Source of the DNA: Vitrella brassicaformis CCMP3155 | Lineage: Eukaryota; Protista; Chromerida | Assembly (NCBI GenBank): GCA_001179505.1 | Contig: CDMY01000572.1 | Coordinates: forward strand, 1-48,901 | Reading direction: 5' to 3' | Length of the DNA: 48,901 nt | Part shown: positions 370 through 48,880 of the stretch, one piece after another | How the letters are laid out: each line of letters starts with the position of its first letter | Position numbering within the stretch: position 1 is the stretch's first letter | Translations under genes and position numbers: made by a program | Notes under the pieces: model-generated | Seen by the model: only the letters and a program-made list of their open reading frames with translations | What the model was told of the DNA's origin: nothing | Database searches by the model: none

Positions 370-1003
370 TGTCGAGCAAGACGTCGATTCGATGCTGTCA
401 AGGGGGCTTGGCATGACGTGACACGGCGAGCAACTGCGGAAAAGATCCACGAAAATATAAAATGTAGGTAGCGATGATCGACCTGCACACACACCAGAGA
501 GACACATCACGACACATCAGTGATAATTACGAGGGAGTTTGAGACGACACACATGTCTGTCTGTCTGTCTGGTTGGTTGGTTGGTTGGTTGGTTGGTTGA
601 CGGATGGGATGGTGAAGGCGTCGTGTTGAGACTCACCACCGCCTTGAAGGACGTCTTCCTAGGTAGCTTGAAGGCCCAACCGTACAGGCTTGCAGGTCAC
701 CCGTCTGACGCCTTCCGTCCCCCCAGAGCACATAACGGCAGACCACAGTCCCACATCGCCAGTGGTGTAGTGGCGGACGGTCTTGGCCATCTCCCCAGGT
801 ATGGACTTCCTGCAGACAGGCAGATAGGCAGTGACCATACCCTCACCTCACCTCATGCTCGCCGCATAGTCGGTCCGTGTCCGTGTTATGTGTACTTTGC
901 CTGCCCCCGCAAACAAGTCTACTACGGTGCCCTTCGGATACAGCCTCCTGCAGCTGGCGGCTTGGTGCGTGGCGATGGCCTCTGGGCCAATGCTGTATCT
1001 GGT
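370..1003 (-). pseudogene. Scattered exon fragments of a TGS1-like methyltransferase paralog
   Basis: Exon ~880-1003 reads RYSIGPEAIATHQAASCRRLYPKGTVVDLFAGAG, matching the TGS1 N-terminal/SAM motif I pattern (F-S-V-T-P-E-x-I-A ... VVDAFCGxG). Exon ~640-700 reads WAFKLPRKTSFKAV followed by a GTGAG donor. 370-490 matches the terminal segment repeated at 45300-45420 and 47650-47760. The central PW-motif exon was not found. Confidence 0.6.
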
Positions 1004-2084
1004 TGACACACACACAACACAACTTGTTACACAAGCACTAGCGAATGAGCGAGCAGATGAACATGCTGTACGTTCCTCCTCCCTCACTCCTCCTCTGTCG
1101 TGCCTCCTTTGTTTGATGAGGGTGGTCTTATCGGTGGGACCGTGCCCCTCTCCCCTCGACGGCGCCGGGGGCAGCTGCACGACAGCAGCCCTCCAGGCCT
1201 CGAAGTGGGGCTGGGGCGAAATGGACGAAGAAATATGCACCGGCACCCATTCACCCAAGTCAGGCAGCGAGCAATTGAAGAAAAGGGCCACGAGAATATA
1301 AAATGTAGGTAGCGATGATCGTCCTGCATACACACGCCAGAGAGACACATCTATGATAATCACACAGTGAGACGGACTTGGCTTCTTTTCATTTTGTCTG
1401 CATTTTGTACCTTCTCTCCAGCCGTCATTCGCGGCATTGCACTCCCAAAGGGCTGCGAGGTCAGGGCAGGCAGCAGTGGACTGACTGGCTCTGGTGTGTA
1501 TGTGTGTGTATTCCGTCCCATTCGAAAAAGACCGACACGCGACAACGGCCATCCACCCGTTCACCCACCCGACGACAAAAGAGAACCACATGATAGGCAA
1601 AACCACTCACTCGCTGACTTCCCCACAGGCGACAAACAAAACGGCCCCAGACAAACCGGCACACTGGCTTCCCCCGACAGCCCAACCAGTGGCAAAAGGA
1701 TGAGGAAAGAAAGCGATCGATCAACGAGTGACGACAAAACGGAACCCGGACACCACACTCCTGCGGCCCCCATCCCTCCTCCCATCCGACCGATCTACCT
1801 CTCCCCTCTGTCTGTCTTGCTCTGGTGGGTGTTGAGAAGAACGGCGCGGTGGGTGTGTTTACTCTACAGAGGCAGTCGTGGGAGTGCTGCCAGTGATCCT
1901 CTCCCCTCTCTTTGTCTCTCTATTTCCCCGCTGTTTCCCTCGACAAGTCTGTCTGTCTGTCTGTCTGCCTCTCCGGTAAGTATCAGTCCACGAGCAATGT
2001 AGTATCGTCTGATATATCTGTGTGTGTGCGTGGGGAGACAGGAAGGTACGTACATCCAGCCAGAGAGCCAGCAGTAACTATCCC

Positions 2085-2896
2085 GCCACCCATACATCCA
2101 TCCATCCATCCATCCATCGAGCCAGCCAGAGAGCCAGCCATGGACCACGTCAAAACACATCCGCCATCAGTGGGTGCACTCACACAGCCAATGAATCGAT
2201 GAATGAATGCAGCAGGGAAAGAACAAGGGCAGGCAGGCTAGCAGGCAGGGCGTCAGCCACCACCTCACACACACCCGCTCGATTGACTACCTGTTGAATC
2301 TCAGCTGCAGTCGCTCAGTTCTGGTGGTGGCGCGGCTGTTGACGATGTGCATGACACGGTCATCCACAGTGGTGTGGGCGGGGGGACACCAGGTGGTCGT
2401 CCGGGAGGGCGGCAGCTTCTTTGCTATACTGCAGACACGACAACACACACACATGGATGGAGACACGTGTGTGGTGTGTGTGCCGTGGGTCGCGTTGCGC
2501 ACACACGTACCGCTCAGCGATGTTGCCGATGTAGGCGGTGATGTATTTCAGCTTGTAGTTAGTCCTGCCCCTCCTGGCGGCAGGCAGGCGGGTGACCATG
2601 GCCTCTATCACCGGGGGCGTGTACGTAATCAGTTCGTGGCCGTTCTCATACAGCTCCCTTGTCGCCTTCCAGGCGCCCAACTCGGCCTGCACACACACGT
2701 CGATGACGACAACACAACGCAAAAGCAGACGACACACATGTCCGTCTGTCTGATTGATGGATGAATGGATGGATGGATGTGACGTGTTAAGACTCACCGC
2801 CGCTTGGAGGGGGGTGTTGCGTAGGAGCTTGAACGCAAACGAGTCGGTGATGGCCTCGCAATCGGCCGACACGTCAAACACCGACTGAGCCACACA

Positions 2897-2928
<32 letters not shown>

Positions 2929-3360
2929 TATGAGTGCTTCCGTGTGTGTGGTGTGTGTCCATCTTCCTTCCTCTCACCCTCGTAGCCCATCTTGGTGATG
3001 TCGAAGGTCCGCTGCCCCTTGACGAATGCCGCCCCGCCCCATGGGAGGTCAGCAAACACCTGCAGTCACACACAAACGAAGCGACACACGAATGCACTCA
3101 TGCACCTTGTGTGTGTGCCTACGTGGGCATGCTGTCTGTGTAGGTACCAGGTCACATCGATGCTTTCGCCGTTTGGTGCGGTCGACGAAGGCATAGAAGC
3201 TCTCCTTGCAGACGCGGGCAGGGGTGACGCCTGACACCCACCCACACACACAGAGAGAAAGAGAAACAGACAGACAGAGAGAGGGAGCAGTGTGGCAGGC
3301 CGCTCATGGGTCCACTCAGCCATGCACAGGCGGAGGCACCAACCGTATAGTTTGAAGTTC
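2085..3360. repeat. Segmental direct repeat matching 43798-45065
   Basis: Exons, introns and 3' flank are near-identical over ~1.27 kb. Confidence 0.9.
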
Positions 3361-3664
3361 TCTTGTGCGTCGGCCGTGTGCGTGGGGTTTATCTCACAGC
3401 ACAGACCTTGAGGCTCTTCAGGCAGAACCGGATCGTGTTGCCGCCTGAATCGAACGCATCAAGCACATAGACAGGCAGACAGACAGACAACAGACGTGTC
3501 ACCAGGACGTGCAGTGCTCGCAACACCACCACAAGGGGCAGGCGAGTGAATGAATGGACGTACCCGCGCCCATGCAGAGGTCCAGCACAATGCCGCCGCT
3601 AACGACATTGTCGGCTATTGTGTCGGCGGTGATGGCGGCGATGTCCTCCTGAGACACGCCTTCC
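2287..3664 (-). pseudogene. TGS1-like RNA cap guanine-N2 methyltransferase, copy A (probably disrupted)
   Basis: Spliced exons give EGVSQEDIAAIT..VLDLCMGAG|GNTIRFC..VFADLPWGG..FDITKMG..DSFAFKLLRNT..NYKLKYITAYIG. A 1-nt deletion near 3397 relative to the intact copy at 29.9 kb gives a premature TAA. The phase-0 donor after GYEGEM seen in copy B is missing. 5' exons run into the gap at 3761. Confidence 0.75.
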
Positions 3665-3760
3665 CTGAGAGCATAGGGCACACACACATGGCACACACTC
3701 ATCCATCCCTCCATGTTTGTGGCGCCAACAACTTCAACTGCACCCCCCCCCCCCCCCCCC

Positions 3761-4060
3761 NNNNNNNNNNNNNNNNNNNNNNNNNNNNNNNNNNNNNNNN
3801 NNNNNNNNNNNNNNNNNNNNNNNNNNNNNNNNNNNNNNNNNNNNNNNNNNNNNNNNNNNNNNNNNNNNNNNNNNNNNNNNNNNNNNNNNNNNNNNNNNNN
3901 NNNNNNNNNNNNNNNNNNNNNNNNNNNNNNNNNNNNNNNNNNNNNNNNNNNNNNNNNNNNNNNNNNNNNNNNNNNNNNNNNNNNNNNNNNNNNNNNNNNN
4001 NNNNNNNNNNNNNNNNNNNNNNNNNNNNNNNNNNNNNNNNNNNNNNNNNNNNNNNNNNNN
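3761..4060. other. Assembly gap of 300 N; others at 11231-11530, 30070-30369, 43498-43797, 45680-45979 and 46756-47055
   Basis: All six gaps are exactly 300 N, which suggests placeholders of unknown true size. Confidence 0.95.
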
Positions 4061-4129: not shown

Positions 4130-4445
4130 CCCGGCTGACCACGTCGGCGATGAGCACATTCTTTGCACTTGACGATGAAGGAGTCTGCCAGCGAGGCTGC
4201 GACCCTGAGGATACAGAAGGCCGACTGCAAGTCATATAAGCGGCAACACACACACACACACACACACACAGAGGGAAACGTACATATGGCACACGTTGTC
4301 CGTGCCTTCACGTACCATGCTCCCGTCGCCCATTTTGTCGAGGGAGTAGGTCTTGCTGTGATACTGTTGGCCCCACGGCATGTCGAAGTGGATGGCGGCG
4401 ATTTTGGTGCCCTCCCTGAAGTAGTCGTCGCAGGCGATCAAGAGC
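4130..4445 (-). pseudogene. Divergent TGS1-like fragment (two exons)
   Basis: AIHFDMPWGQQY..LDKMGDGSM is followed by an exon reading SAFCILRVAASLADSFIVK[frameshift]KNVLIADV. Motifs and intron positions correspond to those of the other copies. Confidence 0.55.
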
Positions 4446-5490
4446 CGCTCGAGCATTCCCACCCCTGCACACACAATGCAGCAATGAATATGTCATGACA
4501 TCCCGTCACCATTCCCGTGGAGGAGGAGAGCTTTGGCGCTTGTCCCTTCTTTCTTGAGAGAGAGTCTGCCGATGGGGGGGAACTTCCGCGCGGACGCGCC
4601 TTGTCGTCTACGGCGGCGCTACAAAAAGAATGTACTCAGCTTTCCTCTTTTCTTCCGCTCACCGGCTTTGCTTTTCTTTTCCTGAACTCACCTTCGTCGA
4701 CTGAGGATCGATTCGCATGGGGGAGACACCTGCACAGCACACACACACACACACCCCAATACAAACCATATCTGCTGTCGTTGAGGACTTCGTCGAGAAA
4801 AGGAGACGACCATTAGGAGAGAGAACACAAGCATGCCAACAGGGCACAGTGAGATGACCACAGCAATGAAACGGACTATACAGTCATACACCGTCATACA
4901 CCATACCGCAACAGCCAACAGAAAAAAAAGGTACTCACCTGTGGGAGGATGCTTTTTTGAAGACAAAAGAAGCGTGCGCGCACTCAGTTGACGCCAGACA
5001 GGCGTCAGGGAATCGCCACCGTTCAGCATAGGGCAGGGCGCCGCCGGCGGACGCCTCCCTTCGAGTCGCTCGTGCCAGCGCTCGTGGCAAGCGGCAGATA
5101 AATCCGCTCGAGTTGGGAGGGGTAGAGGGGGACGGGGCGGACCACACAAGCCAAAAAGCAGATGAAGAGAAAAAGAAGCGGGGCATCTGTGGCCGAAGGA
5201 AGGCTGCAAGGCGATGCGGAGGCAAAAATGTGAAAAGCGGGACGAAATTTTTGTCTCGCATCCAAATTCTCTCCGTCCCGTCTCCAATTCTCGCCGAGGG
5301 AAAATCATTGCCTATGTCAATCTGTTGGCGGAAAATGGAGCAAAACAGCCGCTAAAGGAAACTGAGCTCGCATCCGCAAACGTATTGTGCCGAAGATCCG
5401 GAGAGCAGGAAGAGGCAAGGCAACACACAACTTGAAAGAAAAAGGACGCAAAGATGCCATTGGCCATCTGATCTGTGTTGCTGATTCAGG

Positions 5491-6414
5491 ATGGCGGACT
5501 CGTACTCGGTGACGTGCTCGGCGTTCACAGTTACGGTTTTCTCTTCGTTGGGAGTGCTGATACTCGCCGTCGTTGTGCCGGTTTCATTGCCTGGGTGGCG
5601 AGCCGCTGACCGACATGCGTTTTTTGAGAGTGGTGGCTATGTGGAGGTGCGTCAGGGTTATGGGCTGCAGTTCTACACCCTCACGATGAAGCAGGTGGGC
5701 AGCGGGGCCACCATCCGATGCGAGTCGCACCTTGTCGAATGGGACCTCCCAGGCGATGCGAGCGCACGGCATTCGGGCCGCCAGGAACTCCAGGAGTGCT
5801 CGGGGAAGCACAACGAGAACTGCGAGTGCGTCTCGTCTTACAAGTTCCTGATCAGACAGAGCACGGCAAAGGGCGACGACAAGGCAGCTGCTGTTTGGCG
5901 AGATCTCAGGACGGCGGGTCTCTTTACGTACATCGCCATTGGCGGCGTCTTGTCCCTGCTGACGGTAGCGGGCTGTGGTTTCTGGGCTTCTGCGTCTGAG
6001 CGCCCGGTTTTCCACAAACCACCATTTCCCGACGACGCCATTGGGTCCGGTTTCCACACGGCGGCCTTCTGCTTTTCCATTGTGGCCTTCGCTGTGTGGC
6101 TAACTCTCACCGACTATGACCTGTGCTTCGACGAGGGGAACAGGAGCATGAATGGGGCTTCCTGTCCACTGGGTCTGCCCGCCTACTTCATGATCTGCGC
6201 TTCAGGCCTTTTTCTCGGTGTAGCGGTGGTTTGGCAGTGGTGGTCGGTTGCTGCCTGCCGAAGATTGGCGACTCCCCGTGTGACAGTGTCTGCACCGTCG
6301 GGTCGGCAGTCAGCGACGCTGCCGCTGCCTGTGCAAGTGGTCGGCAAGGCCAGCAATCCCCAGGACGACACGATTACCGTCACGACAAGCGCAACGATTG
6401 CTGGGAGTGTCTGA
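5491..6414 (+). CDS. Intronless 4-TM membrane protein, claudin/PMP22-like topology (paralog 1)
   Basis: 307-aa ORF with four hydrophobic segments, a W..GL motif and a Cys-rich large first loop. Clearly homologous to the ORF at 8.1-9.2 kb (shared STAxGDDKAAAVWR). Confidence 0.8.
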   Translation: MADSYSVTCSAFTVTVFSSLGVLILAVVVPVSLPGWRAADRHAFFESGGYVEVRQGYGLQFYTLTMKQVGSGATIRCESHLVEWDLPGDASARHSGRQELQECSGKHNENCECVSSYKFLIRQSTAKGDDKAAAVWRDLRTAGLFTYIAIGGVLSLLTVAGCGFWASASERPVFHKPPFPDDAIGSGFHTAAFCFSIVAFAVWLTLTDYDLCFDEGNRSMNGASCPLGLPAYFMICASGLFLGVAVVWQWWSVAACRRLATPRVTVSAPSGRQSATLPLPVQVVGKASNPQDDTITVTTSATIAGSV

Positions 6415-8316: not shown

Positions 8317-9243
8317 ATGAGCCCTTCACGCCCTACCATATTGCGCCCTACTGTCGACTGCACGCCGCTGTGCGCTTATCTCAGCAAACGGCCGACGGCG
8401 TGTGGTGCTGCCTTGTTTGTCCTGTTGGCGATTGTGGTGCCGCTCTCATTGCCTGGCTGGCGAGCATCCGACCAGCGAGTCTTCCTGGAAGATGGACACG
8501 CGGAGGTGTCGCAGCACCTCGGGCTGTTCGGCTATCGGCTATCGCTGGACATTGTCGGCGAAGGCAGTACTATCCTGTGCAGACCGCATGTTATCGAAGA
8601 GTCGCCTGTGTGGGAGGCGCCGCAGGAGCTCCAGCAGTGCTTCGGAAACAACACAACCTGTGGGTGCTGGGCGTCCTACAGCTTCCTCGTCGACCAGAGC
8701 ACGGCGGAGGGCGACGACAAGGCAGCTGCTGTGTGGCGAGGCTATAAGAGGGCGGGCACCTTTGTCTACATCTCCATGGGCCTCGTCCTACCGCTGCTGA
8801 TGATCGTGGGTGGCATCTGCTGGAGTCGACGTCTTGACGACCAGGGGTTGTCAACCTTCCCCTGGGACGCCATCGGCGCGAGCCTCTTCACGGCCGCTTT
8901 CTGCCTGCCCATTGTTACCTTCAGTGCGTGGCTGGGCCTCACCAACTATAGGATGTGCTTCGATGAAGCGAGCAGCAGCCTGGAGGGAGGCCACTGCCCC
9001 GCGGCTCTGCCCCCCTACTGGATGCTCGGCTGGTCGTGTCTTTTCCTGGGTGTGCTGGTGACCCGGCTGTGGTGGTGTGTGGCTGTTGAGTGGAGGAAGG
9101 CACATCCACGTGTGTCTGTCCAGGTGCCAACGGCCCCCTCTGTGGGCAGGCACGTGTGGATGGCTGGGCGTGTGATAGGCAAGGCGCGCAACGCCCAAGA
9201 CTCCGACAGCATGACCGTCACGACCGCTGCGTCGAGTGTGTGA
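8317..9243 (+). CDS. Intronless 4-TM membrane protein, claudin/PMP22-like topology (paralog 2)
   Basis: The ORF opens at 8134, but homology to paralog 1 begins near the Met at 8317. It has four TM segments and conserved Cys, PGWRA and STAEGDDKAAAVWR. Confidence 0.8.
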   Translation: MSPSRPTILRPTVDCTPLCAYLSKRPTACGAALFVLLAIVVPLSLPGWRASDQRVFLEDGHAEVSQHLGLFGYRLSLDIVGEGSTILCRPHVIEESPVWEAPQELQQCFGNNTTCGCWASYSFLVDQSTAEGDDKAAAVWRGYKRAGTFVYISMGLVLPLLMIVGGICWSRRLDDQGLSTFPWDAIGASLFTAAFCLPIVTFSAWLGLTNYRMCFDEASSSLEGGHCPAALPPYWMLGWSCLFLGVLVTRLWWCVAVEWRKAHPRVSVQVPTAPSVGRHVWMAGRVIGKARNAQDSDSMTVTTAASSV

Positions 9244-15940: not shown

Positions 15941-15992
15941 CTCGATGTGTGAAAGATGCGCTGTCACAAAATGTGCACAGAACAGACGAGCG

Positions 15993-16198
15993 ACAGCGAG
16001 CTTGCGAGAAGCCGTTGACAGGACGAGCCATTGTGAGCCGGAAAGGCCTTTTCGTCAGGCCTTCTCGGAAGGCCTTCTGAAGGGAGCGTCTCCCCGGACG
16101 ATCGACGGAAAGCTCGCTGCTGAAAAGGAGGAGAAAGAAGAAGGGGCAAGAAGCGCAGCAGGTGAGCCACTGCACGTCGGACAAGTAGATCTGGCTCA
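15993..16198. repeat. ~205-bp dispersed repeat, copy 1, directly upstream of the J-domain/nuclease gene
   Basis: Near-identical to 19089-19291. It contains AAGGCCTT and GAAGGCCTTC palindromes and has no terminal inverted repeats. Confidence 0.9.
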
Positions 16199-18196: not shown

Positions 18197-18227
<31 letters not shown>

Positions 18228-18940: not shown

Positions 18941-19088
18941 AGAAAGGTGAGATGTGATCTGCCCTCACGAGGAGCAAGTTCCCGGCGTTGACGTGGCTAT
19001 GAAGGCGCCTTCTGGATCGTCGCTTGTGGGAGATGAGAGATGCGCGTGCTCCGAGGCACGTGCCGCACGTCAAGAGATTGGACAAGCA

Positions 19089-25740: not shown

Positions 25741-25775
<35 letters not shown>

Positions 25776-28830: not shown

Positions 28831-31800
28831 TCACTTGAACACCAGCTGCAGCCGCTCACTCCGATTAGTCATGGCCCCGCTGTTAACACGGTCGTCTATC
28901 GTTGTCTGGCCGAGGGGGCAGGTGGTGGCGCGGGAGGGCGGCAGCCTTCTGGCGATACTGCACACACCACAATACACACACACACACACACACATGGATG
29001 GATGAAGACACGTGAGGTGCGTGTGGCGTGAGTCGCGTTGCGCACATATGTACCGGTCGGCGATGTGGCCGACGTACACGGTGGTGTACTTGAGGCGGTG
29101 CTCGACTTGGCCGCCCCGCCGCACGCGCGTGACGTAGGCCTCTATCACCGGCGGGCGGTAGCTCACCAACGGGTGGCCGCCGCGGTAAACCTCCCTGGTG
29201 GCGTCCCAGGCCCCCAGCTCGGCCTGCATACACACATCGATGACAACGCACCACACAGAGACGACACATATGTCTGTCTGTCTGTCTGGTTGACGGATGG
29301 AATGATGAAGGCGTCGTGTTGCGACTCACCAGCGCCTTAAAGGGGGTGTTGCGGGGCAGCTTGAAGGCCCAAGAGCTGGTCACCGCCTCGGTATCCGCCA
29401 TTACATCAAATACCGACTGAGCCACATACACACACACACATGAGTGCATCCATGTGTGTGGTGTGTGTAGTGGTGTATGTCCATCTTCCTCTCACACCCA
29501 TCCGTACCATCTCGCCCTCGTAGCCCATGCGGGTGATATCGAACTCCTTCTGGCCCTTCACGAACCTGGCGCCGCCCCACGGCAAGTCGGCAAACACCTG
29601 CAGCCACACACGAAGGAAACAACACACGAATGCACTCAAGCACCACGTGTGTTTGTGTGGGGGGGCGTGCTATCTGCCTGCGTACGAAGTCACAGGTCTT
29701 CTCCTTTTTCTGCATGCGGGCGGTGACGGTATAGAAGGGCTCCTCAAAGACTACCGCCGGCTTCACCCCTGACACACACACGCACACACACACAGAGAGA
29801 GAGAGAGAGAGGAGCAGTGTGGCAGGCCGCTCATGGGTCCACTCAGCCATAGACTGGCGGATTCACCAACCGTAGATCTCGAAGTTGGCCTGTGCGTCGG
29901 CCGTGTGAGGCTTTTTTATCTCGCAGGCGCAGACATTCAGGCCGCTCAGACAGAACTGAATGGCGTTCCCGCCTGAGTTGAACGCATCAAGCACATAGAC
30001 AGACAGACAGACAGACAGACAAGGACATGTCAACAAACCAGAGAGAGAGAGGGGTGGGGGGGGGGGGGGNNNNNNNNNNNNNNNNNNNNNNNNNNNNNNN
30101 NNNNNNNNNNNNNNNNNNNNNNNNNNNNNNNNNNNNNNNNNNNNNNNNNNNNNNNNNNNNNNNNNNNNNNNNNNNNNNNNNNNNNNNNNNNNNNNNNNNN
30201 NNNNNNNNNNNNNNNNNNNNNNNNNNNNNNNNNNNNNNNNNNNNNNNNNNNNNNNNNNNNNNNNNNNNNNNNNNNNNNNNNNNNNNNNNNNNNNNNNNNN
30301 NNNNNNNNNNNNNNNNNNNNNNNNNNNNNNNNNNNNNNNNNNNNNNNNNNNNNNNNNNNNNNNNNNNNNCCATGCATAGGTCGAGGACCTTGCCGCCCCG
30401 GGACACACTGGCCGCCACTGTCTGGGCGGTGATCGCCGCGATGCTCTCCGGTGACGCGCCTTCCCTGAGAGCATAGAGCATACACACGCATACACAGCAC
30501 ACAGCACCCATCCATCCATCCATCAATCCATGTGTGTGGAAGTGGTGTGGTGTGGTGCATTCAGACGCACCGCATCTCCTTGGTCGACAGCTTGGCACTG
30601 TCGTTGGCGAAGATGCGGCGGGTCAGTACATCATCCCATGTGACGTCCACTACCTTGACGTCCAGTATCACGACGCCCCAGGTGCCATGCGTTTGGCGGA
30701 CGTAGCTCTTGTTGGCATACTTGCCGACCAGCTGCGCCAGCTCGTAGTATACCTACACACACACACACACACACGTCATCTATGTGTGTGTGTGTGCTCA
30801 GCTGAGCAGCCCGTGTGTGTCTCCTCCCTCACCATGGCCTTGGTGGGGGGCGGCGGGATCTCCTCGACAGCCTCGTCATCGCTCTCCTATCACATACACA
30901 CACACACACACAGACATGACGGTGTGTCGTCAGCCGTATGCCCGCATCCACCCATGAATTGCCGTTGCTATGTAACTCACGTCACTGGCGGTGGTTTCAG
31001 TGGGGGTGTGGTCTTCTTCGACCTTGATGTAGTCGGCCCAGTTGGGAGGGCCAGTCGGCCAGTTGCCCATGGCCGACGACGATGTTGCGCTGCTGTCCTC
31101 CCGGGTGCGGGCGTGGTGCTCCTCCATAGCTCTGACAGACACACACAGACAGAAAGAGGCGGCGCGTCCGTCAGCATCCACACACACGATGGGTTCATTG
31201 GTGTGCGGGCGGGCAGGTGTGTGTGTGTGTGCATTGATTACCTGAAGGTTTCGGCCTCCTTGAGTTGCTCCAGCACCAGCTGACGCTGCGCCTCGAAATG
31301 AGCCGCCACACGGACGGCAAAGTCGCTGTGTGCACACCCATACACACATACATCTCCCGTCTGTGTGTGTGTAGACGCCTTGGTGTTGGTGTATACCTTG
31401 ATGGGCCGGTCTCCCCGTTGTCCTCCTCCCTCCCACGGACAAGTGAGTTGGCCATCTGCACACACACAACACACCAGGCAGACAGGCAGCCACATCGAGA
31501 TACATGAGAGGGGGATGCATGTGTGTGTCTGTGTGGTGCGGTCGTCCTGACCGATGTGCTGTGGTTGTGGTTGTGGTGCTGCGTCGTGTCGGCGGCGTCG
31601 CTGCCGTCCTCCTCCTACAGACAACACACACACACACCCCGACACACACAGACATACCGTGTGTTGGGGGTGGGTGGGGTGAGTGGCGTACGCACCTTGG
31701 CCTTGGATGCGGCGGAGACGGGCACCTCGCCCGCGGTGGTCTCGATCACCGCCTCGCACGCAGCAGTCCTCTGCGCGGCGTCCTGCAACTCATTGGTCCC

Positions 31801-32990
31801 GACTATCACCTACAGACAGACGCACCCAACACACACACGTGTGTACCAGTCTGTGGATCTGTCTGTAGTACATCTGTGTTGGGGGTGAGTCAGTGGTGAG
31901 TGACCTGACCTTCTCATGTCCCATCGAGGTGTTCTCGTACTTCTCGACCTTCTGGCAGGTCAGCGTGGCGGAGCTGATGGCATGCAAGTGGGTGGGCATC
32001 ACACACACACACACACAGAGACAGAGAGAGAGAGAGAGAGATGGGGAAGGTGTATTGTGTTCGTTGCCTTTTGTGTGTGTGCGTGGTCACTCACCCCTCC
32101 TTCATGTCGTTGACCCACTCGCCCTCGTAGACGTTGCCATTGGGGAACATGTAGGTGCCTTTGCCGTGCATCCACTCGCCCTGGTACACCCCCTCGTCGG
32201 CGTACAGGTACTCGGCCTCGCCGTTGACCCACTCGCCCTCGTACTTCTCCTCCACCACGTTACCCTCGGCGCTACCGGACGTCACGGCGCCCTCGCTGCG
32301 GCGCTTGTCGTCGCGCCACTCGCCCTGGTACACCCCCTCGTCGGCGTACAGGTACTCGGCGTGGCCATGCAGCTCGCCGTTGACCCACTGGCCCTCGAAC
32401 ACCGCACCGTCCGCGAAGCTGAACGTGCCCTGGCTGCGGCGCTTGCCAAACACGAACTCGCCCTCAGATTTCTTGAAGCCTGCACGGCCCACACGGCACC
32501 ATGACGCGTGGACCGAGGGATGGATGGATGGATGGATGGATGGATGCATTTGTTTCAGTGCGGTCGTGTCGCTAGCTCACTGGTGTGTTTGATGACGGTG
32601 CCATCGGGCAGCATGAGATTGGCCTTCAAGAAGGCGACGGGTGGGGGTCTCGTGGGCAATATCTCCTCCATCAGCATGTCCATGACGGACATTCTGGGTT
32701 CCTCGTCATCGGGCTGCACGCAGCCAACACAGAGAAAGAGAGAGAAGATGAAATGCGGCCCGACAGTGGGGCAGATGGGCAGAGGGTGACACAAGTGGCA
32801 TAGAAATGTGGGCTTCTCCTGACCGTTGTGGTGTTGTGTGCGTCATTCAGCCTCGCTATCCATCTCGTCAGAATACCCCACACTCCCCTGTCAGAGAGCA
32901 CACGGCAGCCAGTCAACGATGGGGTGCACCACGTGGCTTTGCTCTCGCCTCACGTGATGAACTCCATCCTTATCAACTCCTCGCAGACCT
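28831..32990 (-). CDS. MORN-repeat plus TGS1-like methyltransferase fusion (copy B, apparently intact)
   Basis: The MORN exon (~32097-32479; FEGQW, YQGEW, YEGEW repeats) splices in phase through seven linker exons to R|EGASPESIAAIT..VLDLCM[gap]GGNAIQF..VFADLPWGG..FKLPRNT..LKYTTVYVG. No stop or frameshift in any visible exon. The true 5' end is unresolved. Confidence 0.7.
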
Positions 32991-41810: not shown

Positions 41811-42189
41811 TCAGTGACTCATCCTGTCCGCTTGCACGCCCGACGTCGCAGCAGGCGCCGTGTAGGGGCAGGGTTGCGCCCGCGCCAAGCGATCTTTCTC
41901 CTTGAGGTGCGGCCCCTCCGCGCCGAGGCGCGACAAAACGTTTTCGTTTACCTCGAGCTCGCAGCTTGCGCGTTTTGGTCCTGCGAGGCGCGGAGCAGCC
42001 CCTCCGCACTCGCGTCACATAAGCCTCGACGACCGGTCAGGCGGCGAGCAATTGAAGAAATGGGCCACGTAATATAAAATGTAGGTAGCGATAATCGGCC
42101 TGCGTACACCACACCACAGCACACCATGACGCGTGGACCGAGGGATGGATGGATGGATGCATTTGTTTCAGTGAGGTCGTGTCGCTGGC

Positions 42190-42766
42190 TCACCGTTGTG
42201 GGGCCTGACATGACGAGACACGGCGAGCACCGCTATCCACCAGGCTCATCACGCGATCCTCCACGGTGGTGTGGGCGGGGCACCAGGTGATGGTGGGGGG
42301 GGCAGCTTCTTCGAAGTGCTGCTCACACGACAATTCACACACATGGATGGAGACACGTGTGTAGTGTGTGGCGGGGGCTCCGTTGTGCACATACGTACCG
42401 CTCAGCGATGTTGCCGATGTAGGCGGTGATGTATTTCAGCTTGTAGTTGAAGCCGCCGCCCCTCCTCGCTAGGAGGCGCGTCAGGTAGGCATCTATCACT
42501 GGGGGCCGGTAGCTGACCAGTTCGTGGCCGTTCTCATACAGCTCCCTTGTCGCCTTCCAGGCGCCCAACTCGGCCTGCACACACATCGATGACGACAACA
42601 CAACACAAAAGCAGACGACACACATGTCCGTCTGTCTGATGGATGGATGGATGTGACGTGTTAAGACTCACCACCGCTTGGAGGGGCGTGTTGCGTGGGA
42701 GCTTGAATGCAAACGAGTCGGTGATGGCCTCGCAATCGGCCAACACATCGAACACCGACTGAGCCA

Positions 42767-42800
<34 letters not shown>

Positions 42801-43311
42801 TATGAGTGCTTCCGTGTGTGTGGTGTGTGTCCATCTTCCTTCCTCTCACCCTCGTAGCCCATCTTGGTGATGTCAAAGGTCCGCTGCCCCTTGACGAATG
42901 CCGCCCCGCCCCATGGGAGGTCAGCAAACACCTGCAGTCACACACAAACGAAGCGACACACGAATGCACTCATGCACCTTGTGTGTGTGCCTACGTGGGC
43001 ATGCTGTCTGCCTACGTACCAGGTCGCATCGATGCTTTCGCTGTTTGGTGCGGTCGACGAAAGCATAGAAGGACTCCTTGCAGATGCGGGCAGGGGTGAC
43101 GCCTGACACCCACACACACACCCACACACAGACACACACACAGAGAGAGAGAGAGAGGGAGCAGTGTGGCAGGCCGCTCATGGGTCCACTCAGCCATACA
43201 CAGGCGGAGGCACCAACCGTATAGCTTGAAGTTCTCTTGTGCGTCGTCGACGTGGGTCGGAGTTGATTTCGCAGGCACAGACCTTGAGGCCCTTAGGGCA
43301 GAATTGGATCG
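42190..43311 (-). pseudogene. TGS1-like copy C (5'-truncated, frameshifted)
   Basis: It has the VFADLPWGG, AFKLPRNT and NYKLKYITAYIG exons. There is a +1 insertion near 43260 (..EIN[t]PTHVDD..), a 4-nt deletion in the last exon, and no motif-I exon directly upstream. Confidence 0.7.
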
Positions 43312-44004
43312 TGTTGCCTCCTGAATCGAACGCATCAAGCAGATAGACAGACAGACAACAGACATGTCAACATGACGTGCAGTGCTCGGATGTCTCAAGC
43401 TTCTCCTGCATTCATTCATGTGAGGGAACGGCGCGTTGCTCCGACCTTGAGGGCATCCTATCCAGCAAGGCGTCGATTCGATGCTGTCAAGGGGGCTNNN
43501 NNNNNNNNNNNNNNNNNNNNNNNNNNNNNNNNNNNNNNNNNNNNNNNNNNNNNNNNNNNNNNNNNNNNNNNNNNNNNNNNNNNNNNNNNNNNNNNNNNNN
43601 NNNNNNNNNNNNNNNNNNNNNNNNNNNNNNNNNNNNNNNNNNNNNNNNNNNNNNNNNNNNNNNNNNNNNNNNNNNNNNNNNNNNNNNNNNNNNNNNNNNN
43701 NNNNNNNNNNNNNNNNNNNNNNNNNNNNNNNNNNNNNNNNNNNNNNNNNNNNNNNNNNNNNNNNNNNNNNNNNNNNNNNNNNNNNNNNNNNNNNNNNACC
43801 CATACATCCATCCATCCATCCATCGAGCCAGCCGGAGAGCCAGCCAGAGAGCCAGCCATGGACCACGTCAAAACACATCCGCCATCAGCGGGTGCACTCA
43901 CACAGCCAATGAATCGATGAATGAATGCAGCAGGGAAAGAACAAGGGCAGGCAGGCTAGCAGGCAGGGCGTCAGCCACCACCTCACACACACCCGCTCGA
44001 TTGA

Positions 44005-44600
44005 CTACCTGTTGAATCTCAGCTGCAGTCGCTCAGTTCTGGTGGTGGCGCGGCTGTTGACGATGTGCATGACACGGTCATCCACAGTGGTGTGGGCGGG
44101 GGGACACCAGGTGGTCGTCCGGGAGGGCGGCAGCTTCTTTGCCATACTGCAGACACGACAACACACACACACGGATGGAGACACGTGTGTGGTGTGTGTG
44201 CCGTGGGTCGCGTTGCGCACACACGTACCGCTCAGCGATGTTGCCGATGTAGGCGGTGATGTATTTCAGCTTGTAGTTAGTCCTGCCCCTCCTGGCGGCA
44301 GGCAGGCGGGTGACCATGGCCTCTATCACCGGGGGCGTGTACGTAATCAGTTCGTGGCCGTTCTCATACAGCTCCCTTGTCGCCTTCCAGGCGCCCAACT
44401 CGGCCTGCACACACACGTCGATGACGACAACACAACGCAAAAGCAGACGACACACATGTCCGTCTGTCTGATGGATGGATGGATGTGACGTGTTAAGACT
44501 CACCGCCGCTTGGAGGGGGGTGTTGCGTAGGAGCTTGAACGCGAACGAGTCGGTGATGGCCTCGCAATCGGCCAACACGTCAAACACCGACTGAGCCACA

Positions 44601-44634
<34 letters not shown>

Positions 44635-45150
44635 CGAGTGCATCCGTGTGTGTGGTGTGTGTCCATCTTCCTTCCTCTCACCCTCGTAGCCCATCTTGGT
44701 GATGTCGAAGGTCCGCTGCCCCTGACGAATGCCGCCCCGCCCCATGGGAGGTCAGCAAACACCTGCAGTCACACACAAACGAAGCGACACACGAATGCAC
44801 TCATGCACCTTGTGTGTGTGCCTACGTGGGCATGCTGTCTGTGTAGGTACCAGGTCGCATCGATGCTTTCGCTGTTTGGTGCGGTCGACGAAGCTATAGA
44901 AGCTCTCCTTGCAGATGCGGGCAGGGGTGACGCCTGACACCCACCCACCCACCCACCCACACACAGGGAGAGAGAGAGAGAGAGAGGGAGCATTGTGGCA
45001 GGCCGCTCATGGGTCCACTCAGCCATGCACAGGCAGGCGGAGGCACCAACCGTATAGCTTGAAGTTCTCTTGTGCGTCGTCGACGTGGGTCGGAGTTGAT
45101 TTCGCAGGCACAGACCTTGAGGCCCTTAAGGCAGAATTGGATCGTGTTGC
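44005..45150 (-). pseudogene. TGS1-like copy D
   Basis: Near-identical to 2287-3360. It carries the same +1 insertion as copy C, the GGN-exon acceptor is changed from CAG to CAC, and there is a 1-nt deletion near 44722. Confidence 0.7.
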
Positions 45151-45979
45151 CGCGTGAATCGAACGCATCAAGCAGATAGACAGACAGACAACAAACATGT
45201 CAACATGACGTGCAGTGCTCACATGTCTCAAGCTTCTCCTGCATTCACTCATGTGAGGGAACGGCGCGTTGCTCCTATCTTGAGGGCATCCTATCCAGCA
45301 AGGCGTCGATTCGATGCTGTCAAGGGAGCTTGGCATGACGTGACACGGCGAGCAACTGCGGAAAAGATCCACGAAAACATAAAATGTAGGTAGCGACGAT
45401 CGACCTGCATAGACACACCAGAGAGACACATGAATGACAAAATGAACTCCCCTGCACACAGAAAGACATGCGCCATCGCAGAAACAAAGGGCCAGATGAG
45501 GCGACGCATTTCACACGCTCTCTGTCTTCCTGCAGGCTGCTCTTCGCTGCATGTGCGGTCGGCCATGCGTGTGCGCATACCGGGTGTGCAGCCCTGACAG
45601 GTAGTACTCCTCATCTAGATACGCGAGTGCTGCGTTGCGCAGCGATGGCGGCACGTCGCCATTATCAATGGTGCTCATGNNNNNNNNNNNNNNNNNNNNN
45701 NNNNNNNNNNNNNNNNNNNNNNNNNNNNNNNNNNNNNNNNNNNNNNNNNNNNNNNNNNNNNNNNNNNNNNNNNNNNNNNNNNNNNNNNNNNNNNNNNNNN
45801 NNNNNNNNNNNNNNNNNNNNNNNNNNNNNNNNNNNNNNNNNNNNNNNNNNNNNNNNNNNNNNNNNNNNNNNNNNNNNNNNNNNNNNNNNNNNNNNNNNNN
45901 NNNNNNNNNNNNNNNNNNNNNNNNNNNNNNNNNNNNNNNNNNNNNNNNNNNNNNNNNNNNNNNNNNNNNNNNNNNNNNN

Positions 45980-46445
45980 AGCCCATCTTGGTGATGTCGA
46001 AGGTCCGCTGCCCCTGACGAATGCCGCCCCGCCCCATGGGAGGTCAGCAAACACCTGCAGTCACACACAAACGAAGCGACACACGAATGCACTCATGCAC
46101 CTTGTGTGTGTGCCTACGTGGGCATGCTGTCTGTGTAGGTACCAGGTCGCATCGATGCTTTCGCTGTTTGGTGCGGTCGACGAAAGCATAGAAGGACTCC
46201 TTGCAGATGCGGGCAGGGGTGACGCCTGACACCCACACACACACCCACACACAGACACACACACAGAGAGAGAGAGAGAGGGAGCAGTGTGGCAGGCCGC
46301 TCATGGGTCCACTCAGCCATACACAGGCGGAGGCACCAACCGTATAGCTTGAAGTTCTCTTGTGCGTCGTCGACGTGGGTCGGAGTTGATTTCGCAGGCA
46401 CAGACCTTGAGGCCCTTAAGGCAGAATTGGATCGTGTTGCCGCGT
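45980..46445 (-). pseudogene. TGS1-like copy E (partial, gap-bounded)
   Basis: Same exons and lesions as copy D. It may be an assembly or haplotype duplicate. Confidence 0.55.
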
Positions 46446-47055
46446 GAATCGAACGCATCAAGCAGATAGACAGACAGACAACAAACATGTCAACATGACG
46501 TGCAGTGCTCGGATGTCTCAAGCTTCTCCTGCATTCATTCATGTGAGGGAACGGCGCGTTGCTCCGACCTTGAGGGCATCCTATCCAGCAAGGCGTCGAT
46601 TCGATGCTGTCAAGGGGGCTTGGCATGACGTGACACGGCGAGCAACTGCGGAAAAGATCCACGAAAATACAAAATGTAGGTAGCGATGATCGACCTGCAT
46701 AGACACGTCAGAGAGACACCTGAATGACAAAATGAACTCTCCTCTGCCCCCCGCCNNNNNNNNNNNNNNNNNNNNNNNNNNNNNNNNNNNNNNNNNNNNN
46801 NNNNNNNNNNNNNNNNNNNNNNNNNNNNNNNNNNNNNNNNNNNNNNNNNNNNNNNNNNNNNNNNNNNNNNNNNNNNNNNNNNNNNNNNNNNNNNNNNNNN
46901 NNNNNNNNNNNNNNNNNNNNNNNNNNNNNNNNNNNNNNNNNNNNNNNNNNNNNNNNNNNNNNNNNNNNNNNNNNNNNNNNNNNNNNNNNNNNNNNNNNNN
47001 NNNNNNNNNNNNNNNNNNNNNNNNNNNNNNNNNNNNNNNNNNNNNNNNNNNNNNN

Positions 47056-47505
47056 GTCAAAGGTCCGCTGCCCCTTGACGAATGCCGCCCCGCCCCATGG
47101 GAGGTCAGCAAACACCTGCAGTCACACACAAACGAAGCGACACACGAATGCACTCATGCACCTTGTGTGTGTGCCTACGTGGGCATGCTGTCTGCCTACG
47201 TACCAGGTCGCATCGATGCTTTCGCTGTTTGGTGCGGTCGACGAAAGCATAGAAGGACTCCTTGCAGATGCGGGCAGGGGTGACGCCTGACACCCACACA
47301 CACACCCACACACAGACACACACACAGAGAGAGAGAGAGAGGGAGCAGTGTGGCAGGCCGCTCATGGGTCCACTCAGCCATACACAGGCGGAGGCACCAA
47401 CCGTATAGCTTGAAGTTCTCTTGTGCGTCGTCGACGTGGGTCGGAGTTGATTTCGCAGGCACAGACCTTGAGGCCCTTAGGGCAGAATTGGATCGTGTTG
47501 CCTCC
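47056..47505 (-). pseudogene. TGS1-like copy F (partial, gap-bounded)
   Basis: Essentially identical to 42870-43320. It may be an assembly or haplotype duplicate. Confidence 0.55.
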
Positions 47506-48189
47506 TGAATCGAACGCATCAAGCAGATAGACAGACAGACAACAGACATGTCAACATGACGTGCAGTGCTCGGATGTCTCAAGCTTCTCCTGCATTCATT
47601 CATGTGAGGGAACGGCGCGTTGCTCCGACCTTGAGGGCATCCTATCCAGCAAGGCGTCGATTCGATGCTGTCAAGGGGGCTTGGCATGACGTGACACGGC
47701 GAGCAACTGCGGAAAAGATCCACGAAAATACAAAATGTAGGTAGCGATGATCGACCTGCATAGACACGTCAGAGAGACACCTGAATGACAAAATGAACTC
47801 TCCTCTGCCCCCCGCCAGCTTTCCTCCGCACTCGAAGAACGACTCTCCGTCGCAGTGCAGAGAGGCGCCTTCGGTGAGAGCTGGCACACAGAAAGACATC
47901 CCTGCGGCCATTCTGCATCCACACACACAATGCATTAAGTCGCTAAACAAACGAGTGCATGTGTCGTGTTGTGTGTTCATTCACGCACAAAATGAGAGCC
48001 ATTGAAAGGGAGTAGTGTGGGCACTTATGTGTTGGTTTGTTTGTGCGTACCATTTTGCCGTCGGCTCCCGTGTTGTCGAGGGGGTACCCTCTGTTGCGTA
48101 CGCCGGTGCACACACACATACGTACACAGCAACACAGGCCATGACACACAGGCCTTGTGACCATTAACGCCTGTGTGTTGTGCGTCCTA

Positions 48190-48880
48190 CCACGTCGGCG
48201 ATGGCCGTGTGGCGAGGGATCTTAATGGCGAACGACGGGCTCAGGTTAAGCATTAGCGCAAACATATCATACAGGCTCTGAATGAAGGGAACGGACCACA
48301 CACACACACACACACAAACACAGAGAGAGAGAGAGAGAGAGAGTGGGCGTGTCATCCGCTGCTCCTCTTTATTTTCACCATATCGCCGCTGTTGCCCTTT
48401 TTGGTAATGTTGTAGTTGCCGCGCGCCTTGTATTCCGGCCCCACGGCGGGTCGAAATAGACCTGAACGATTCCACACACGCATACACACACACACAGAGA
48501 CATGTCAGATGATGGGTGCAGGTATGATCTATCCATTATCCATCAATCAAGTGCTGACCACGTCGAACGCCGGCTTGCCGGGCTTTATCATCCCGCGGGC
48601 GATAATGTGGTCCTCCATCTTGTCGGTGCGGGCCAAGAAGCAGTCCTGGTATATGTGCACGTGGTCATAGCCTGCGCAAACACACACACACACACACAAC
48701 ACACACACATGGACACACATCCGTATGGCATGGACCGTGTTTGGTGCACACCATACCGTATACGTGGCGCAGGTATACGTGGCGCAGGTTGTGTATGGCA
48801 TTTTCGTAGTGCGTGGGGTTCTCCTCCGACCCCACCACCTCCAAACCATTGGCGGCGAAGCCAATGGCGTTGCCCGCTGC
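48190..48880 (-). pseudogene. Divergent TGS1-like copy G with a canonical DPPW motif
   Basis: Exons read GNAIGFAANGLEVVGSEENPTHYENAIHNLRHVY, GYDHVHIYQDCF.., VYFDPPWG[apparent -1 frameshift]PEYKARGNYNIT..GDM and ..SPSFAIKIPRHTAIADV. There is a 15-nt tandem duplication (LRHVY x2). The gene continues beyond the window. Confidence 0.65.

What the first reader, a model, noticed from the sequence alone, without database searches (positions are those of the whole stretch)
880..48880. Local expansion of TGS1-like cap methyltransferases (about 9 copies or fragments in 49 kb)
Seen: homologous exons with shared intron positions at ~0.4-1.0, 2.3-3.7, 4.1-4.4, 28.8-30.5, 42.2-43.3, 44.0-45.2, 46.0-46.4, 47.1-47.5 and 48.2-48.9 kb, all on the minus strand. 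Knowledge: the combination xPExIA / DxxxGxGGNxIQF / F-x-(S/D)-PPWGG / FDI / xLPRN / KLKxITAYxG is characteristic of TGS1 (PF09445), which is usually a single-copy gene making m2,2,7G caps. Inference: rapid birth-and-death evolution like this is more typical of conflict or defence genes, which suggests a new role such as marking or modifying foreign RNA caps or other nucleic-acid substrates.
Basis: partly seen in the sequence, partly recalled or inferred. Interest (0 to 1): 0.75.

Follow-up and report, generated by a model that had tools for sequence, protein, structure and literature searches.

The report
Decaying cluster of TGS1-like methyltransferase genes
This stretch of the alga Vitrella brassicaformis holds one apparently intact gene joining MORN repeats to a divergent RNA-cap (TGS1-like) methyltransferase, surrounded by eight broken, truncated or gap-bounded relatives, so it is a lineage-specific gene family caught in birth and decay rather than a demonstrated new defence system.

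Summary

Only copy B (28.8-32.7 kb, public model CEM23921.1) has every exon in frame. It scores for MORN (73.7 bits) and PF09445 (53.3 bits), and its nearest solved non-MORN structure is human TGS1.

The other copies are damaged or incomplete:
- A has a frameshift with a stop in exon 2.
- C, D, E and F show no exon 1 or MORN part in the sequence read (gaps adjoin C, D and E), and they share another exon-2 frameshift.
- D and E have also lost the exon-2 splice acceptor.
- G is frameshifted in exon 4 and cut by the contig end.
- H and I are fragments of two other subfamilies.
- E and F lie between assembly gaps. F is 100% identical to C over 626 nt, so the copy number is uncertain.

The B/A/C/D type occurs only on this contig and a 2.8-kb contig. 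Vitrella has at least 17 further TGS-like loci elsewhere, including a canonical TGS1. Relatives closer than canonical TGS1 were found only in Vitrella.

dN/dS between B and the other copies is about 0.25. Nothing links the family to defence. The scan had already noted MORN-TGS1-like fusions on other pieces of this genome.

The parts
28831..32713 (-). Copy B, public gene model CEM23921.1 (P0124, 703 aa): MORN repeats, a long linker and a TGS1-like methyltransferase. It is the only copy with all exons in frame. TGS-like exons: e0 ends at 30571, e1 30464-30370 (clipped by the gap), e2 29972-29871, e3 29768-29686, e4 29597-29508, e5 29416-29330, e6 29223-29054, e7 28957-28831 (TGA stop).
   Evidence: exon boundaries and frame; identity of P0124; MORN 73.7 bits, PF09445 53.3 bits; human TGS1 3EGI, E 2.6e-9; mapping of P0124 residues 37-605 to 32713-29330
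32091..32474 (-). MORN repeats of copy B, with an internal duplication (32172-32244 against 32316-32400)
   Evidence: PF02493, 77 bits; (83.5% direct repeat)
30070..30369 (.). Assembly gap inside B, at the junction of exon 1 and intron 1. Because of it, the public model skips the end of exon 1 (the strand carrying the motif-I Asp).
2290..3664 (-). Copy A (public model P0001): exons e1 to e7 are present, but exon 2 carries a -1 frameshift that gives a TAA stop, B's exon-4 donor is deleted, and LPRN is changed to LLRN. The public model bridges the damage with wrong-frame exons.
42240..43320 (-). Copy C (public model P0003): exons e2 to e7 only. It has a +1 frameshift in exon 2 and the exon-4 donor is deleted. 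Its exon 6 contains a patch more like B. Its upstream side ends at gap 43498.
44008..45153 (-). Copy D (public model P0002): exons e2 to e7. It has a +1 frameshift in exon 2, the exon-2 acceptor is changed from AG to AC, exon 4 has a -1 deletion, and LPRN is changed to LLRN.
45980..46443 (-). Copy E: exons e2 to e4 only, lying between two assembly gaps. It shares D's exon-4 deletion and AC acceptor but is otherwise 98.6-98.8% identical to C and F.
47056..47504 (-). Copy F: exons e2 to e4 only, starting at a gap. It is 100% identical to C over 626 nt and may be a gap-filling duplicate of C.
   Evidence: PMC4501334
48191..48880 (-). Copy G: a different subfamily (DPPWG type, with relatives at C248 and C262). 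Exons e2 to e5 are present. Exon 4 has a 1-nt deletion relative to the C248 copy. Exon 2 has a 15-nt tandem duplication. Exon 1 is lost at the contig end.
636..1000 (-). Fragment H: an exon-1-like piece of the C476 subfamily (875-1000) and an exon-5-like piece 86% identical to B (636-696). Exons 2 to 4 are missing.
4168..4456 (-). Fragment I: a fused e3/e4-like exon (DMPWG type, as in the C802 subfamily) and an e5-like exon that lacks PRN. Public model P0001 joins it to A across a gap.
29806..29872 (-). Conserved block in intron 2, 86-93% identical in all six copies and absent from the rest of the genome. Unexplained.
45291..45431 (-). Junction element between tandem units. It also occurs at 369-505, 1267-1359, 42036-42130, 46581-46719 and 47642-47780, and marks a repeat unit of e2 to e7 plus the junction.

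Best explanation
The window is a Vitrella brassicaformis contig. It carries a locally duplicated subfamily of divergent TGS1-family (RNA cap guanine-N2) methyltransferase genes in different stages of decay.

One copy, B, is a complete gene. It encodes an N-terminal MORN-repeat region derived from a MORN1-like gene, a long linker, and a C-terminal TGS-like domain. That domain keeps the AdoMet-binding Asp and the GxGGN loop, an acidic residue after strand 2, the cap-stacking Trp of motif IV (here D-L-P-W), and the P-R-N phosphate contact.

Inference: B is, or recently was, an AdoMet-dependent N2 methyltransferase acting on m7G-type caps. The MORN part probably tethers it to a membrane or scaffold. 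The changed methyl-pocket residues (human Pro764 to Leu, Phe804 to Lys) suggest it may add one methyl group rather than two.

The other places are pseudogenes or fragments made by DNA-level tandem and segmental duplication. The repeat unit is e2 to e7 plus a junction element. These copies were then broken by frameshifts, loss of splice sites and truncation. Fragments of two other Vitrella TGS-like subfamilies have also landed here. The housekeeping TGS1 is a separate gene on another contig.
For: Shown:
- Homology and collinearity with TGS1.
- B's exons e2 to e7 have AG/GT borders and one open frame ending in TGA.
- The lesions in A, C, D, E, F and G.
- Public models P0001-P0003 need wrong-frame or truncated solutions.
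- MORN repeats occur only upstream of B.
- The MORN plus TGS-like architecture is shared with CEM16023.1 on contig C476.
- The subfamily is confined to C572 and C619.
- A canonical TGS1 with SPPWGG lies at C562.
- There are at least 17 other TGS-like loci in the genome.
- dN/dS between B and the others is 0.22-0.27.
- The roles of the residues come from the human TGS1 structure paper PMC2709555, mapped through the alignment.
- B, CEM16023.1 and P0130 form a clade (support 0.956) on a very long stem, apart from the Vitrella canonical TGS1.
Against: - No expression or activity data were available. B's own intactness rests on a model that crosses an assembly gap at the end of exon 1.
- B has a very long terminal branch (1.42 substitutions per site). 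Several functional residues are changed (human Ser671 to Gly, Asp747 not conserved, Pro764 to Leu, Tyr771 to Phe, Phe804 to Lys), so it could itself be inactive.
- Frameshifts in a short-read assembly of near-identical tandem copies could be partly assembly errors.
- Pairwise dN/dS among A, C and D is about 0.3 rather than 1. That fits poorly with long-dead copies unless gene conversion from live paralogues is involved. The counts are small, and exon 2 is misaligned by the indels.
Confidence: 0.72

Rival explanations
1. This is a functional, fast-diversifying family of cap or nucleic-acid methyltransferases engaged in genetic conflict or defence. On this view the many copies are maintained because variety is useful.
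For: - The expansion is lineage-specific, with several subfamilies and clusters (three copies on C802, this contig).
- Relatives closer than canonical TGS1 were found only in Vitrella, in a search of 1.84 billion representative proteins.
- The clade has very long branches.
- Exon 6 has a variable patch with mosaic similarity between copies.
- D and E carry a frame-restoring deletion in exon 4.
Against: - dN/dS is 0.22-0.27.
- Most local copies lack motif I or carry stops.
- No defence or mobile-element genes were recognised nearby. Only ten large ORFs were scanned, and one is an ankyrin-repeat gene.
- The apparent excess conservation of introns is mostly a low-complexity baseline.
Confidence: 0.1
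2. The copy number is largely an assembly artefact. Short-read contigs of one or two loci were placed several times in the scaffold by scaffolding and gap filling.
For: - There are four 300-N gaps within 42-47 kb.
- E and F are pieces of about 0.8 kb bounded by gaps.
- C and F are 100% identical over 626 nt, and E and F are 98.8% identical.
- The assembly used velvet, SSPACE and Gapfiller (PMC4501334).
Against: - A, B, C and D each span the e2-e7 body and differ by 6-30% in sequence, with different indels.
- G, H and I belong to other subfamilies.
- At most one or two of the nine places (F, perhaps E) can be collapsed.
Confidence: 0.08
3. The 5'-truncated copies C and D (models P0003 and P0002) are expressed as proteins without motif I. 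They keep the cap-binding half (Trp of motif IV, PRN) and act as non-catalytic cap binders or regulators.
For: - Public gene models exist and pass the PF09445 threshold (26.5 and 27.3 bits).
- D's exons e4 to e7 are in one frame through a new donor site.
- dN/dS among A, C and D is about 0.3.
Against: - The models are computational predictions.
- C's exon 4 to exon 5 junction is out of frame, and its model skips exon 5, which carries PRN.
- D has 14 scrambled residues directly after WGG and has LLRN in place of LPRN.
- The low dN/dS can come from conversion tracts and small counts.
Confidence: 0.07

Closest known systems
TGS1 (trimethylguanosine synthase; human TGS1 structures 3GDH and 3EGI; Pfam PF09445)
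   Same: - Same fold family by profile, by sequence search of solved structures and by the protein atlas.
- Collinear motifs: (S/T)PExIA, D..GxGGN, an acidic residue after strand 2, NxExYG, the motif IV Trp followed by GG, PRN, and the C-terminal K-x-x-T/A-x-Y-x-G strand.
- A recognisable remnant of the N-terminal extension.
   Different: - Not the orthologue. Vitrella's canonical TGS1, with SPPWGG, is on contig C562.
- Here motif IV is DLPW, human Phe804 is replaced by Lys, Tyr771 by Phe, and Asp747 is not conserved.
- The domain is fused to MORN repeats and split by introns that the large domain exon of the canonical gene lacks.
- It is multi-copy and mostly decayed.
Giardia Tgs2, Trichomonas TvTgs and mimivirus Tgs (cap N2 methyltransferases that add only one methyl)
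   Same: These are divergent TGS-family enzymes. Giardia Tgs2 and the mimivirus enzyme have Asp instead of Ser at the start of motif IV (DPPW), as do copy G and the C476 subfamily (PMC2709555). Giardia Tgs2 and TvTgs add only one methyl group (PMC2588526). A one-methyl outcome is a plausible guess for B, because two of the three methyl-pocket residues are changed.
   Different: I held no sequences of these enzymes, so no direct comparison or tree was made. None of them is reported with MORN repeats or as a large paralogue family (TvTgs is reported as a single gene).
MORN1 of apicomplexans (structures 6T69, 6T4R, 6T6Q)
   Same: B's N-terminal repeats match MORN1 best among solved structures (E 6e-31).
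   Different: Only a few repeats are present, partly duplicated and degenerate, and they are joined to a methyltransferase. The full MORN1-like gene lies elsewhere (C22).
Plant TGS1-like paralogue (lupin efl candidate gene, PMC8440268)
   Same: It is an example of a lineage-specific extra TGS1-like gene alongside the housekeeping TGS1 (abstract listed).
   Different: It is a single extra gene in plants. There is no MORN fusion, no tandem array and no decay series. I did not compare the sequences.

Membership tests
TGS1 family / PF09445 (RNA cap guanine-N2 methyltransferase) | Profile match above Pfam's gathering score, as the best methyltransferase family | tested here: met
   P0124 (B) scores 53.3 bits against a cut-off of 22, and PF09445 is the only methyltransferase family hit. 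P0002 scores 26.5 and P0003 27.3. B's exon 2 alone scores 24.8. All ten atlas neighbours listed for the relative P0125 are PF09445 clusters.
TGS1 family / PF09445 | Nearest solved structure is TGS1 | tested here: met
   Human TGS1 (3EGI and 3GDH) is the only non-MORN family hit: E 2.6e-9 for P0124 and 5e-17 for P0125.
TGS1 family / PF09445 | AdoMet site: motif-I Asp (human D696), GxGGN (N704), and an acidic residue after strand 2 (D719) | tested here: met
   In B and A, V-L-D-L-C-M-G-A-G|G-N is read across the splice between exons 1 and 2, and D719 is replaced by Glu. In B the gap clips the last bases of exon 1. This feature is NOT met in C, D, E and F, where no exon 1 is present in the sequence read.
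TGS1 family / PF09445 | Motif IV (S/D)-P-P-W with the cap-stacking Trp (human W766), followed by GG | tested here: inconclusive
   The Trp and GG are present in all copies. Ser to Asp is tolerated in human TGS1 (97% activity, PMC2709555). The first Pro is Leu (DLPW) in A-F and B and Met in I. Only G has DPPW.
TGS1 family / PF09445 | Cap-phosphate and methyl-pocket residues (human K646, Y771, F804, P806, R807, N808) | tested here: inconclusive
   P-R-N is kept in B and C and changed to L-R-N in A and D. Y771 is replaced by Phe and F804 by Lys. No equivalent of K646 was identified (residue roles from PMC2709555).
TGS1 family / PF09445 | N-terminal extension required for activity in human TGS1 | tested here: inconclusive
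   P0125 has I-K-L-x-x-E-x-x-Y-S-I-S-P-E, which matches the end of the extension well. B has only a weak remnant, read by eye. Neither was tested by profile.
TGS1 family / PF09445 | Methyl transfer from AdoMet to N2 of m7G nucleotides | not testable with these tools
   This needs an enzyme assay.
TGS1 orthologue (single-copy housekeeping gene) | Groups with canonical TGS1 and is the genome's best TGS1 match | tested here: not met
   The best match in the genome is C562 (84.9 bits to PF09445; 241 bits to the canonical profile). B, P0125 and P0130 form a separate long-stem clade. With P0002 as query, no canonical TGS1 reached E 0.001 in the search of 1.84 billion representatives.
MORN repeat proteins (PF02493) | MORN repeat profile above the gathering score | tested here: met
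   73.7 bits for P0124 and 77 bits for ORF 32091-32549. This applies to copy B only.

The most novel reading that the evidence does not exclude
Vitrella has built a lineage-specific toolkit of MORN-anchored and other divergent cap guanine-N2 methyltransferases: several subfamilies and at least 20 loci. The intact members, including B, would place di- or trimethylguanosine-type caps on particular RNA classes at particular cell sites. The constant duplication and decay seen here would be the by-product of selection for new specificities.
Probability: 0.12. Interest if true: 0.7.

Novelty: new variant of a known kind. Interest (0 to 1): 0.42.

Why it matters
TGS1 is normally a single housekeeping gene. 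A free-living relative of the apicomplexan parasites that carries a canonical TGS1 plus some twenty divergent TGS-like loci, several fused to MORN repeats, raises a question: do chromerids use extra cap-methylation states, or tether cap-modifying enzymes to particular sites? I found no paper that mentions this.

For this window itself, the practical lesson is about annotation. Three of the four public 'trimethylguanosine synthase' models here (P0001, P0002, P0003) are built on broken copies. The fourth (B) lacks part of motif I because of an assembly gap.

Tried and rejected
- Exon-by-exon Pfam scans: only exon 2 scores on its own, and the other exons are too short.
- Introns conserved more than synonymous sites. 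B against A, C and D gave an intron distance of 0.15-0.17 against pS of 0.57-0.60. This looked like homogenised introns around selected exons. A control shows that non-matching introns of these genes already align at 0.54-0.73 because of GT/CT/CA-rich low complexity, against 0.71-0.83 for matching ones. I dropped the claim, except for the 67-nt block in intron 2.
- The intron-2 block as a known RNA or a genome-wide repeat: no Rfam match, no covariation, and no copies outside the family.
- Introner or transposon origin of the copies: not supported, because the junction element and the intron block are confined to this family.
- Word-based homologue searches found only Vitrella proteins.
- No joined (spliced) model of my own was used in any search. 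I used exons by reference and the public models. In one script B's exons e2 to e7 were concatenated only to check frame and stop codon.
- No structure prediction was run. B's public model lacks strand 1 because of the gap, and the sequence match to TGS1 was already clear.
- The tree has no outgroup and no Giardia, mimivirus or Chromera sequences. The attachment point of the clade (sister P0007, support 0.63) is not resolved.

Full report
**Source and assembly.** The window is the whole of contig C572 (48,901 bp) of a 72.7-Mb, 1064-contig genome. Public proteins encoded on it are labelled Vitrella brassicaformis CCMP3155. That genome was assembled from Illumina reads with velvet, scaffolded with SSPACE and gap-filled with Gapfiller (PMC4501334). 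This matters for the six 300-N gaps.

**Observation.** A self-comparison of the window and a six-way alignment show one repeat family on the minus strand.

| Copy | Span | Note |
|---|---|---|
| A | 2.1-3.7 kb | about 94% identical to D, 89% to C |
| B | 28.7-30.6 kb | only about 70% identical to A and D |
| C | 42.2-43.5 kb | about 92% identical to D |
| D | 43.8-45.7 kb | |
| E | 45,980-46,755 | short piece touching gaps |
| F | from 47,056 | short piece touching a gap |

I built a profile from 120 canonical TGS1 proteins and searched all six reading frames of the window. Apart from three plus-strand rows at noise level (i-Evalue above 1), it hit only the minus strand. In every copy the hits run in the same order of profile positions: about 265-307, then 331-354, then 357-392. 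The same profile also marked a divergent copy G (48.4-48.9 kb) and a piece H at 899-997. Fragment I (4.17-4.46 kb) is visible in the translation and is part of public model P0001.

**Gaps (tested first, as asked).**
- Gap 30070-30369 lies inside B. Exon 1 runs from 30464 to the gap edge and stops two codons short of where A's exon 1 ends. After the gap, 97 nt of intron precede the exon-2 acceptor. A's intron 1 is 119 nt, the flanks match A on both sides, and the exon phases agree. Continuity is therefore likely, but it is not proven.
- Gap 3761-4060 separates A's exon 1 from fragment I. Public model P0001 splices across it, but I belongs to another subfamily. The paralogous contig C619 has an e6-e7 fragment in the corresponding interval. 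That splice is therefore not credible.
- The three gaps at 43.5, 45.7 and 46.8 kb separate C|D|E|F and cut E and F inside exon 4.
- C 42872-43497 and F 47056-47681 are identical over 626 nt. F may be a gap-filling duplicate of C.
- Gap 11231-11530 touches no copy.

**What the copies are.** B's exons e2 to e7 have AG/GT borders, join in one frame and end in TGA. The HMMER scan of 1.84 billion representatives returned B's public model, CEM23921.1 (P0124, 703 aa).
- Pfam gives MORN at 73.7 bits and PF09445 at 53.3 bits, with no other methyltransferase family.
- Among solved structures, the N-terminus matches apicomplexan MORN1.
- The C-terminus matches only human TGS1 (E 2.6e-9).
- The model maps to 32713-28831.
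- Because of the gap, it skips the end of exon 1, which the genome plainly encodes (G-G-K-V-L-D-L-C-M).

The other copies are all defective relative to B.
- A: a 1-nt loss in exon 2 gives a TAA stop.
- A, C and D: a 16-nt deletion removes B's exon-4 donor. The remaining GTGAGA donor leaves exon 4 out of frame with exon 5 in A and C.
- A and D: LPRN is changed to LLRN.
- C, D, E and F: they share a 1-nt gain in the same part of exon 2. No exon 1 or MORN region is present upstream of them in the sequence read. Gaps adjoin C, D and E, but F's upstream side runs uninterrupted into G.
- D and E: the exon-2 acceptor is AC. They have a further 1-nt loss in exon 4, which scrambles 14 residues but restores the frame into exon 5.
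- G: it lacks one base in exon 4 compared with its intact relative on C248, and it is cut by the contig end.

The public models show the same problems. P0001 bridges A with wrong-frame exons. P0002 and P0003 start inside exon 2 and so lack motif I.

A junction element recurs between units (369-505, 42036-42130, 45291-45431, 46581-46719, 47642-47780). The array therefore arose by tandem duplication of a unit of e2 to e7 plus the junction, at the DNA level and with its introns.

**Family placement.** Vitrella has a canonical TGS1 with W-Y-E-V-T-P-E, G-I-G-G-N-T-I-Q and S-P-P-W-G-G on contig C562. It scores 84.9 bits to PF09445 and 241 bits to the canonical profile. A second, fairly canonical gene lies on C423. 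The remaining loci are divergent:

| Type | Loci |
|---|---|
| DLPWGG | C445 |
| DMPWG (same type as fragment I) | C802 (three copies), C545, C322, C255, C453, C77 |
| MORN-fused DPPWGG (same type as exon 1 of H; proteins P0125, P0130, P0131) | C476, C430, C379 |
| G type | C248, C262 |
| Fragments | C619 |

The B/A/C/D type itself occurs only on C572 and C619.

Two intron positions, inside motif I (G-x-G|G-N) and after Y-G, are shared among many of these paralogues, including C423. The canonical gene's domain lies largely in one exon.

With P0002 as the query, the scan of 1.84 billion representatives found only Vitrella proteins below E 1e-10, and no canonical TGS1 below 0.001. The word-based searches also found only Vitrella.

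In a 154-column tree, B, P0125 and P0130 form a clade (support 0.956) on a stem of 1.16 substitutions per site. B has a terminal branch of 1.42, against a median root-to-tip distance of 0.73 for canonical TGS1. The Vitrella canonical gene is not their sister.

The domain is therefore a TGS-family member but not a TGS1 orthologue.

**Residues.** Residue roles were taken from the human TGS1 structure paper (PMC2709555) and mapped through the alignment.

B keeps:
- D696 and N704
- an acidic residue at D719 (Glu)
- N731
- W766, G767 and G768
- P806, R807 and N808
- Ser at T673

B changes:
- S763 to Asp (tolerated in the human enzyme, 97% activity)
- P764 to Leu
- Y771 to Phe
- F804 to Lys
- S671 to Gly
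- D747, which has no clear counterpart

P764 and F804 are two of the three residues proposed to hold the first methyl group during the second methylation. A one-methyl product is therefore a reasonable guess, but it is inference only.

**Selection.** Codon counts were summed exon by exon. They give dN/dS of 0.22-0.27 for B against A, C or D, with dS saturated at about 1.1. That is the signature of past purifying selection, not of an arms race.

Among A, C and D the ratio is about 0.3, but it rests on few changes. These include a mosaic patch in C's exon 6 that looks like a conversion tract and columns disturbed by the indels. I do not read it as proof of function.

The low-complexity control removed the apparent intron-conservation signal described under things tried and rejected. 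What remains unexplained is a 67-nt block in intron 2. It is 86-93% identical in all copies, is unique to the family, and has no Rfam match and no covariation.

**Mechanism.** The best reading, with confidence about 0.7, has three parts.
- B is a MORN-tethered, AdoMet-dependent cap guanine-N2 methyltransferase paralogue. Its homology and residues are shown. Its activity, substrate and tethering are inferred.
- The rest of the cluster is a series of dead or dying duplicates.
- H and I are stray fragments of two sister subfamilies.

The rival readings are a selected defence-like diversification, a pure assembly artefact, and truncated cap-binding pseudoenzymes. Each is given with its own test in the rival section.

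**Literature and earlier notes.** I found no paper linking Vitrella or chromerids with a TGS expansion or a MORN-TGS fusion. The scan's own earlier notes had already flagged MORN-TGS1-like fusions on this window and on other pieces of the genome. I confirmed the fusion for B and for CEM16023.1.

**Limits.**
- No spliced model of my own was used in any search. The only concatenation was the frame check.
- The single HMMER scan used a truncated public model.
- No eukaryotic genome collection other than the protein libraries could be searched, so absence from Chromera or dinoflagellates is not established.

Noticed in passing
window 29806-29872 (-); also 3278-3345, 43152-43219, 44981-45052, 46275-46342, 47336-47403: A 67-nt block at the start of intron 2 is 86-93% identical between B and all other copies, with 40 nt invariant, although the neighbouring exons are only 65-79% identical. 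It occurs nowhere else in the genome. It has no Rfam match and no covariation.
   Followed up: partly
window 44676-44762 and 45980-46054 (-): D and E share a 1-nt deletion in exon 4. Together with the upstream GTGAGA donor (B's donor is deleted in A, C and D), it puts exon 4 back in frame with exon 5 at the cost of 14 scrambled residues. This is either coincidence or a trace of selection on the downstream frame.
   Followed up: partly
window 45559-45678 (-) and 1-51: The first exon of public model P0002 is a copied fragment of an unrelated Vitrella gene family (74% identical to CEM17578.1, with another copy at C491:43320). The region is a patchwork of duplicated gene pieces.
   Followed up: partly
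L019 (contig C619, 2795 bp): This small contig parallels window 3.5-5.3 kb (88% identity to 4520-5311). It carries an A-type e6-e7 fragment, an exon-1 fragment with a frameshift, and a G-type exon-1 fragment. It may show what is hidden in gap 3761-4060.
   Followed up: partly
window 48757-48786 (-): Exon 2 of copy G has an in-frame 15-nt tandem duplication (L-R-H-V-Y twice) that is absent from its relative on C248.
   Followed up: partly
window 32172-32244 and 32316-32400 (-): There is an internal direct repeat (83.5% identity) inside B's MORN region, and some repeats look truncated.
   Followed up: no
window 18185-18230, 25740-25783, 32000-32041, 29771-29817, 48296-48352: Near-identical (CT)n(GT)n tracts of about 40 nt recur in the window; in the TGS-like copies they lie in introns. 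Low complexity of this kind makes unrelated introns of the TGS-like genes align at 54-73% identity.
   Followed up: partly
window 35544-37187 (-): A large open frame with ankyrin repeats (PF00023, 37.7 bits) lies between B and the C-F array. Nine other large ORFs in the window had no Pfam match.
   Followed up: no
window 5777-6253 vs 8619-9085; 15985-16198 vs 19081-19291: Two further direct repeats unrelated to the TGS-like family (67.6% and 95.3% identity).
   Followed up: no
genome contig C802 (35.5, 52.3 and 78.7 kb): A second local cluster: three copies of the DMPWG-type TGS-like subfamily, 97-100% identical in the first exon, lie on one contig.
   Followed up: partly
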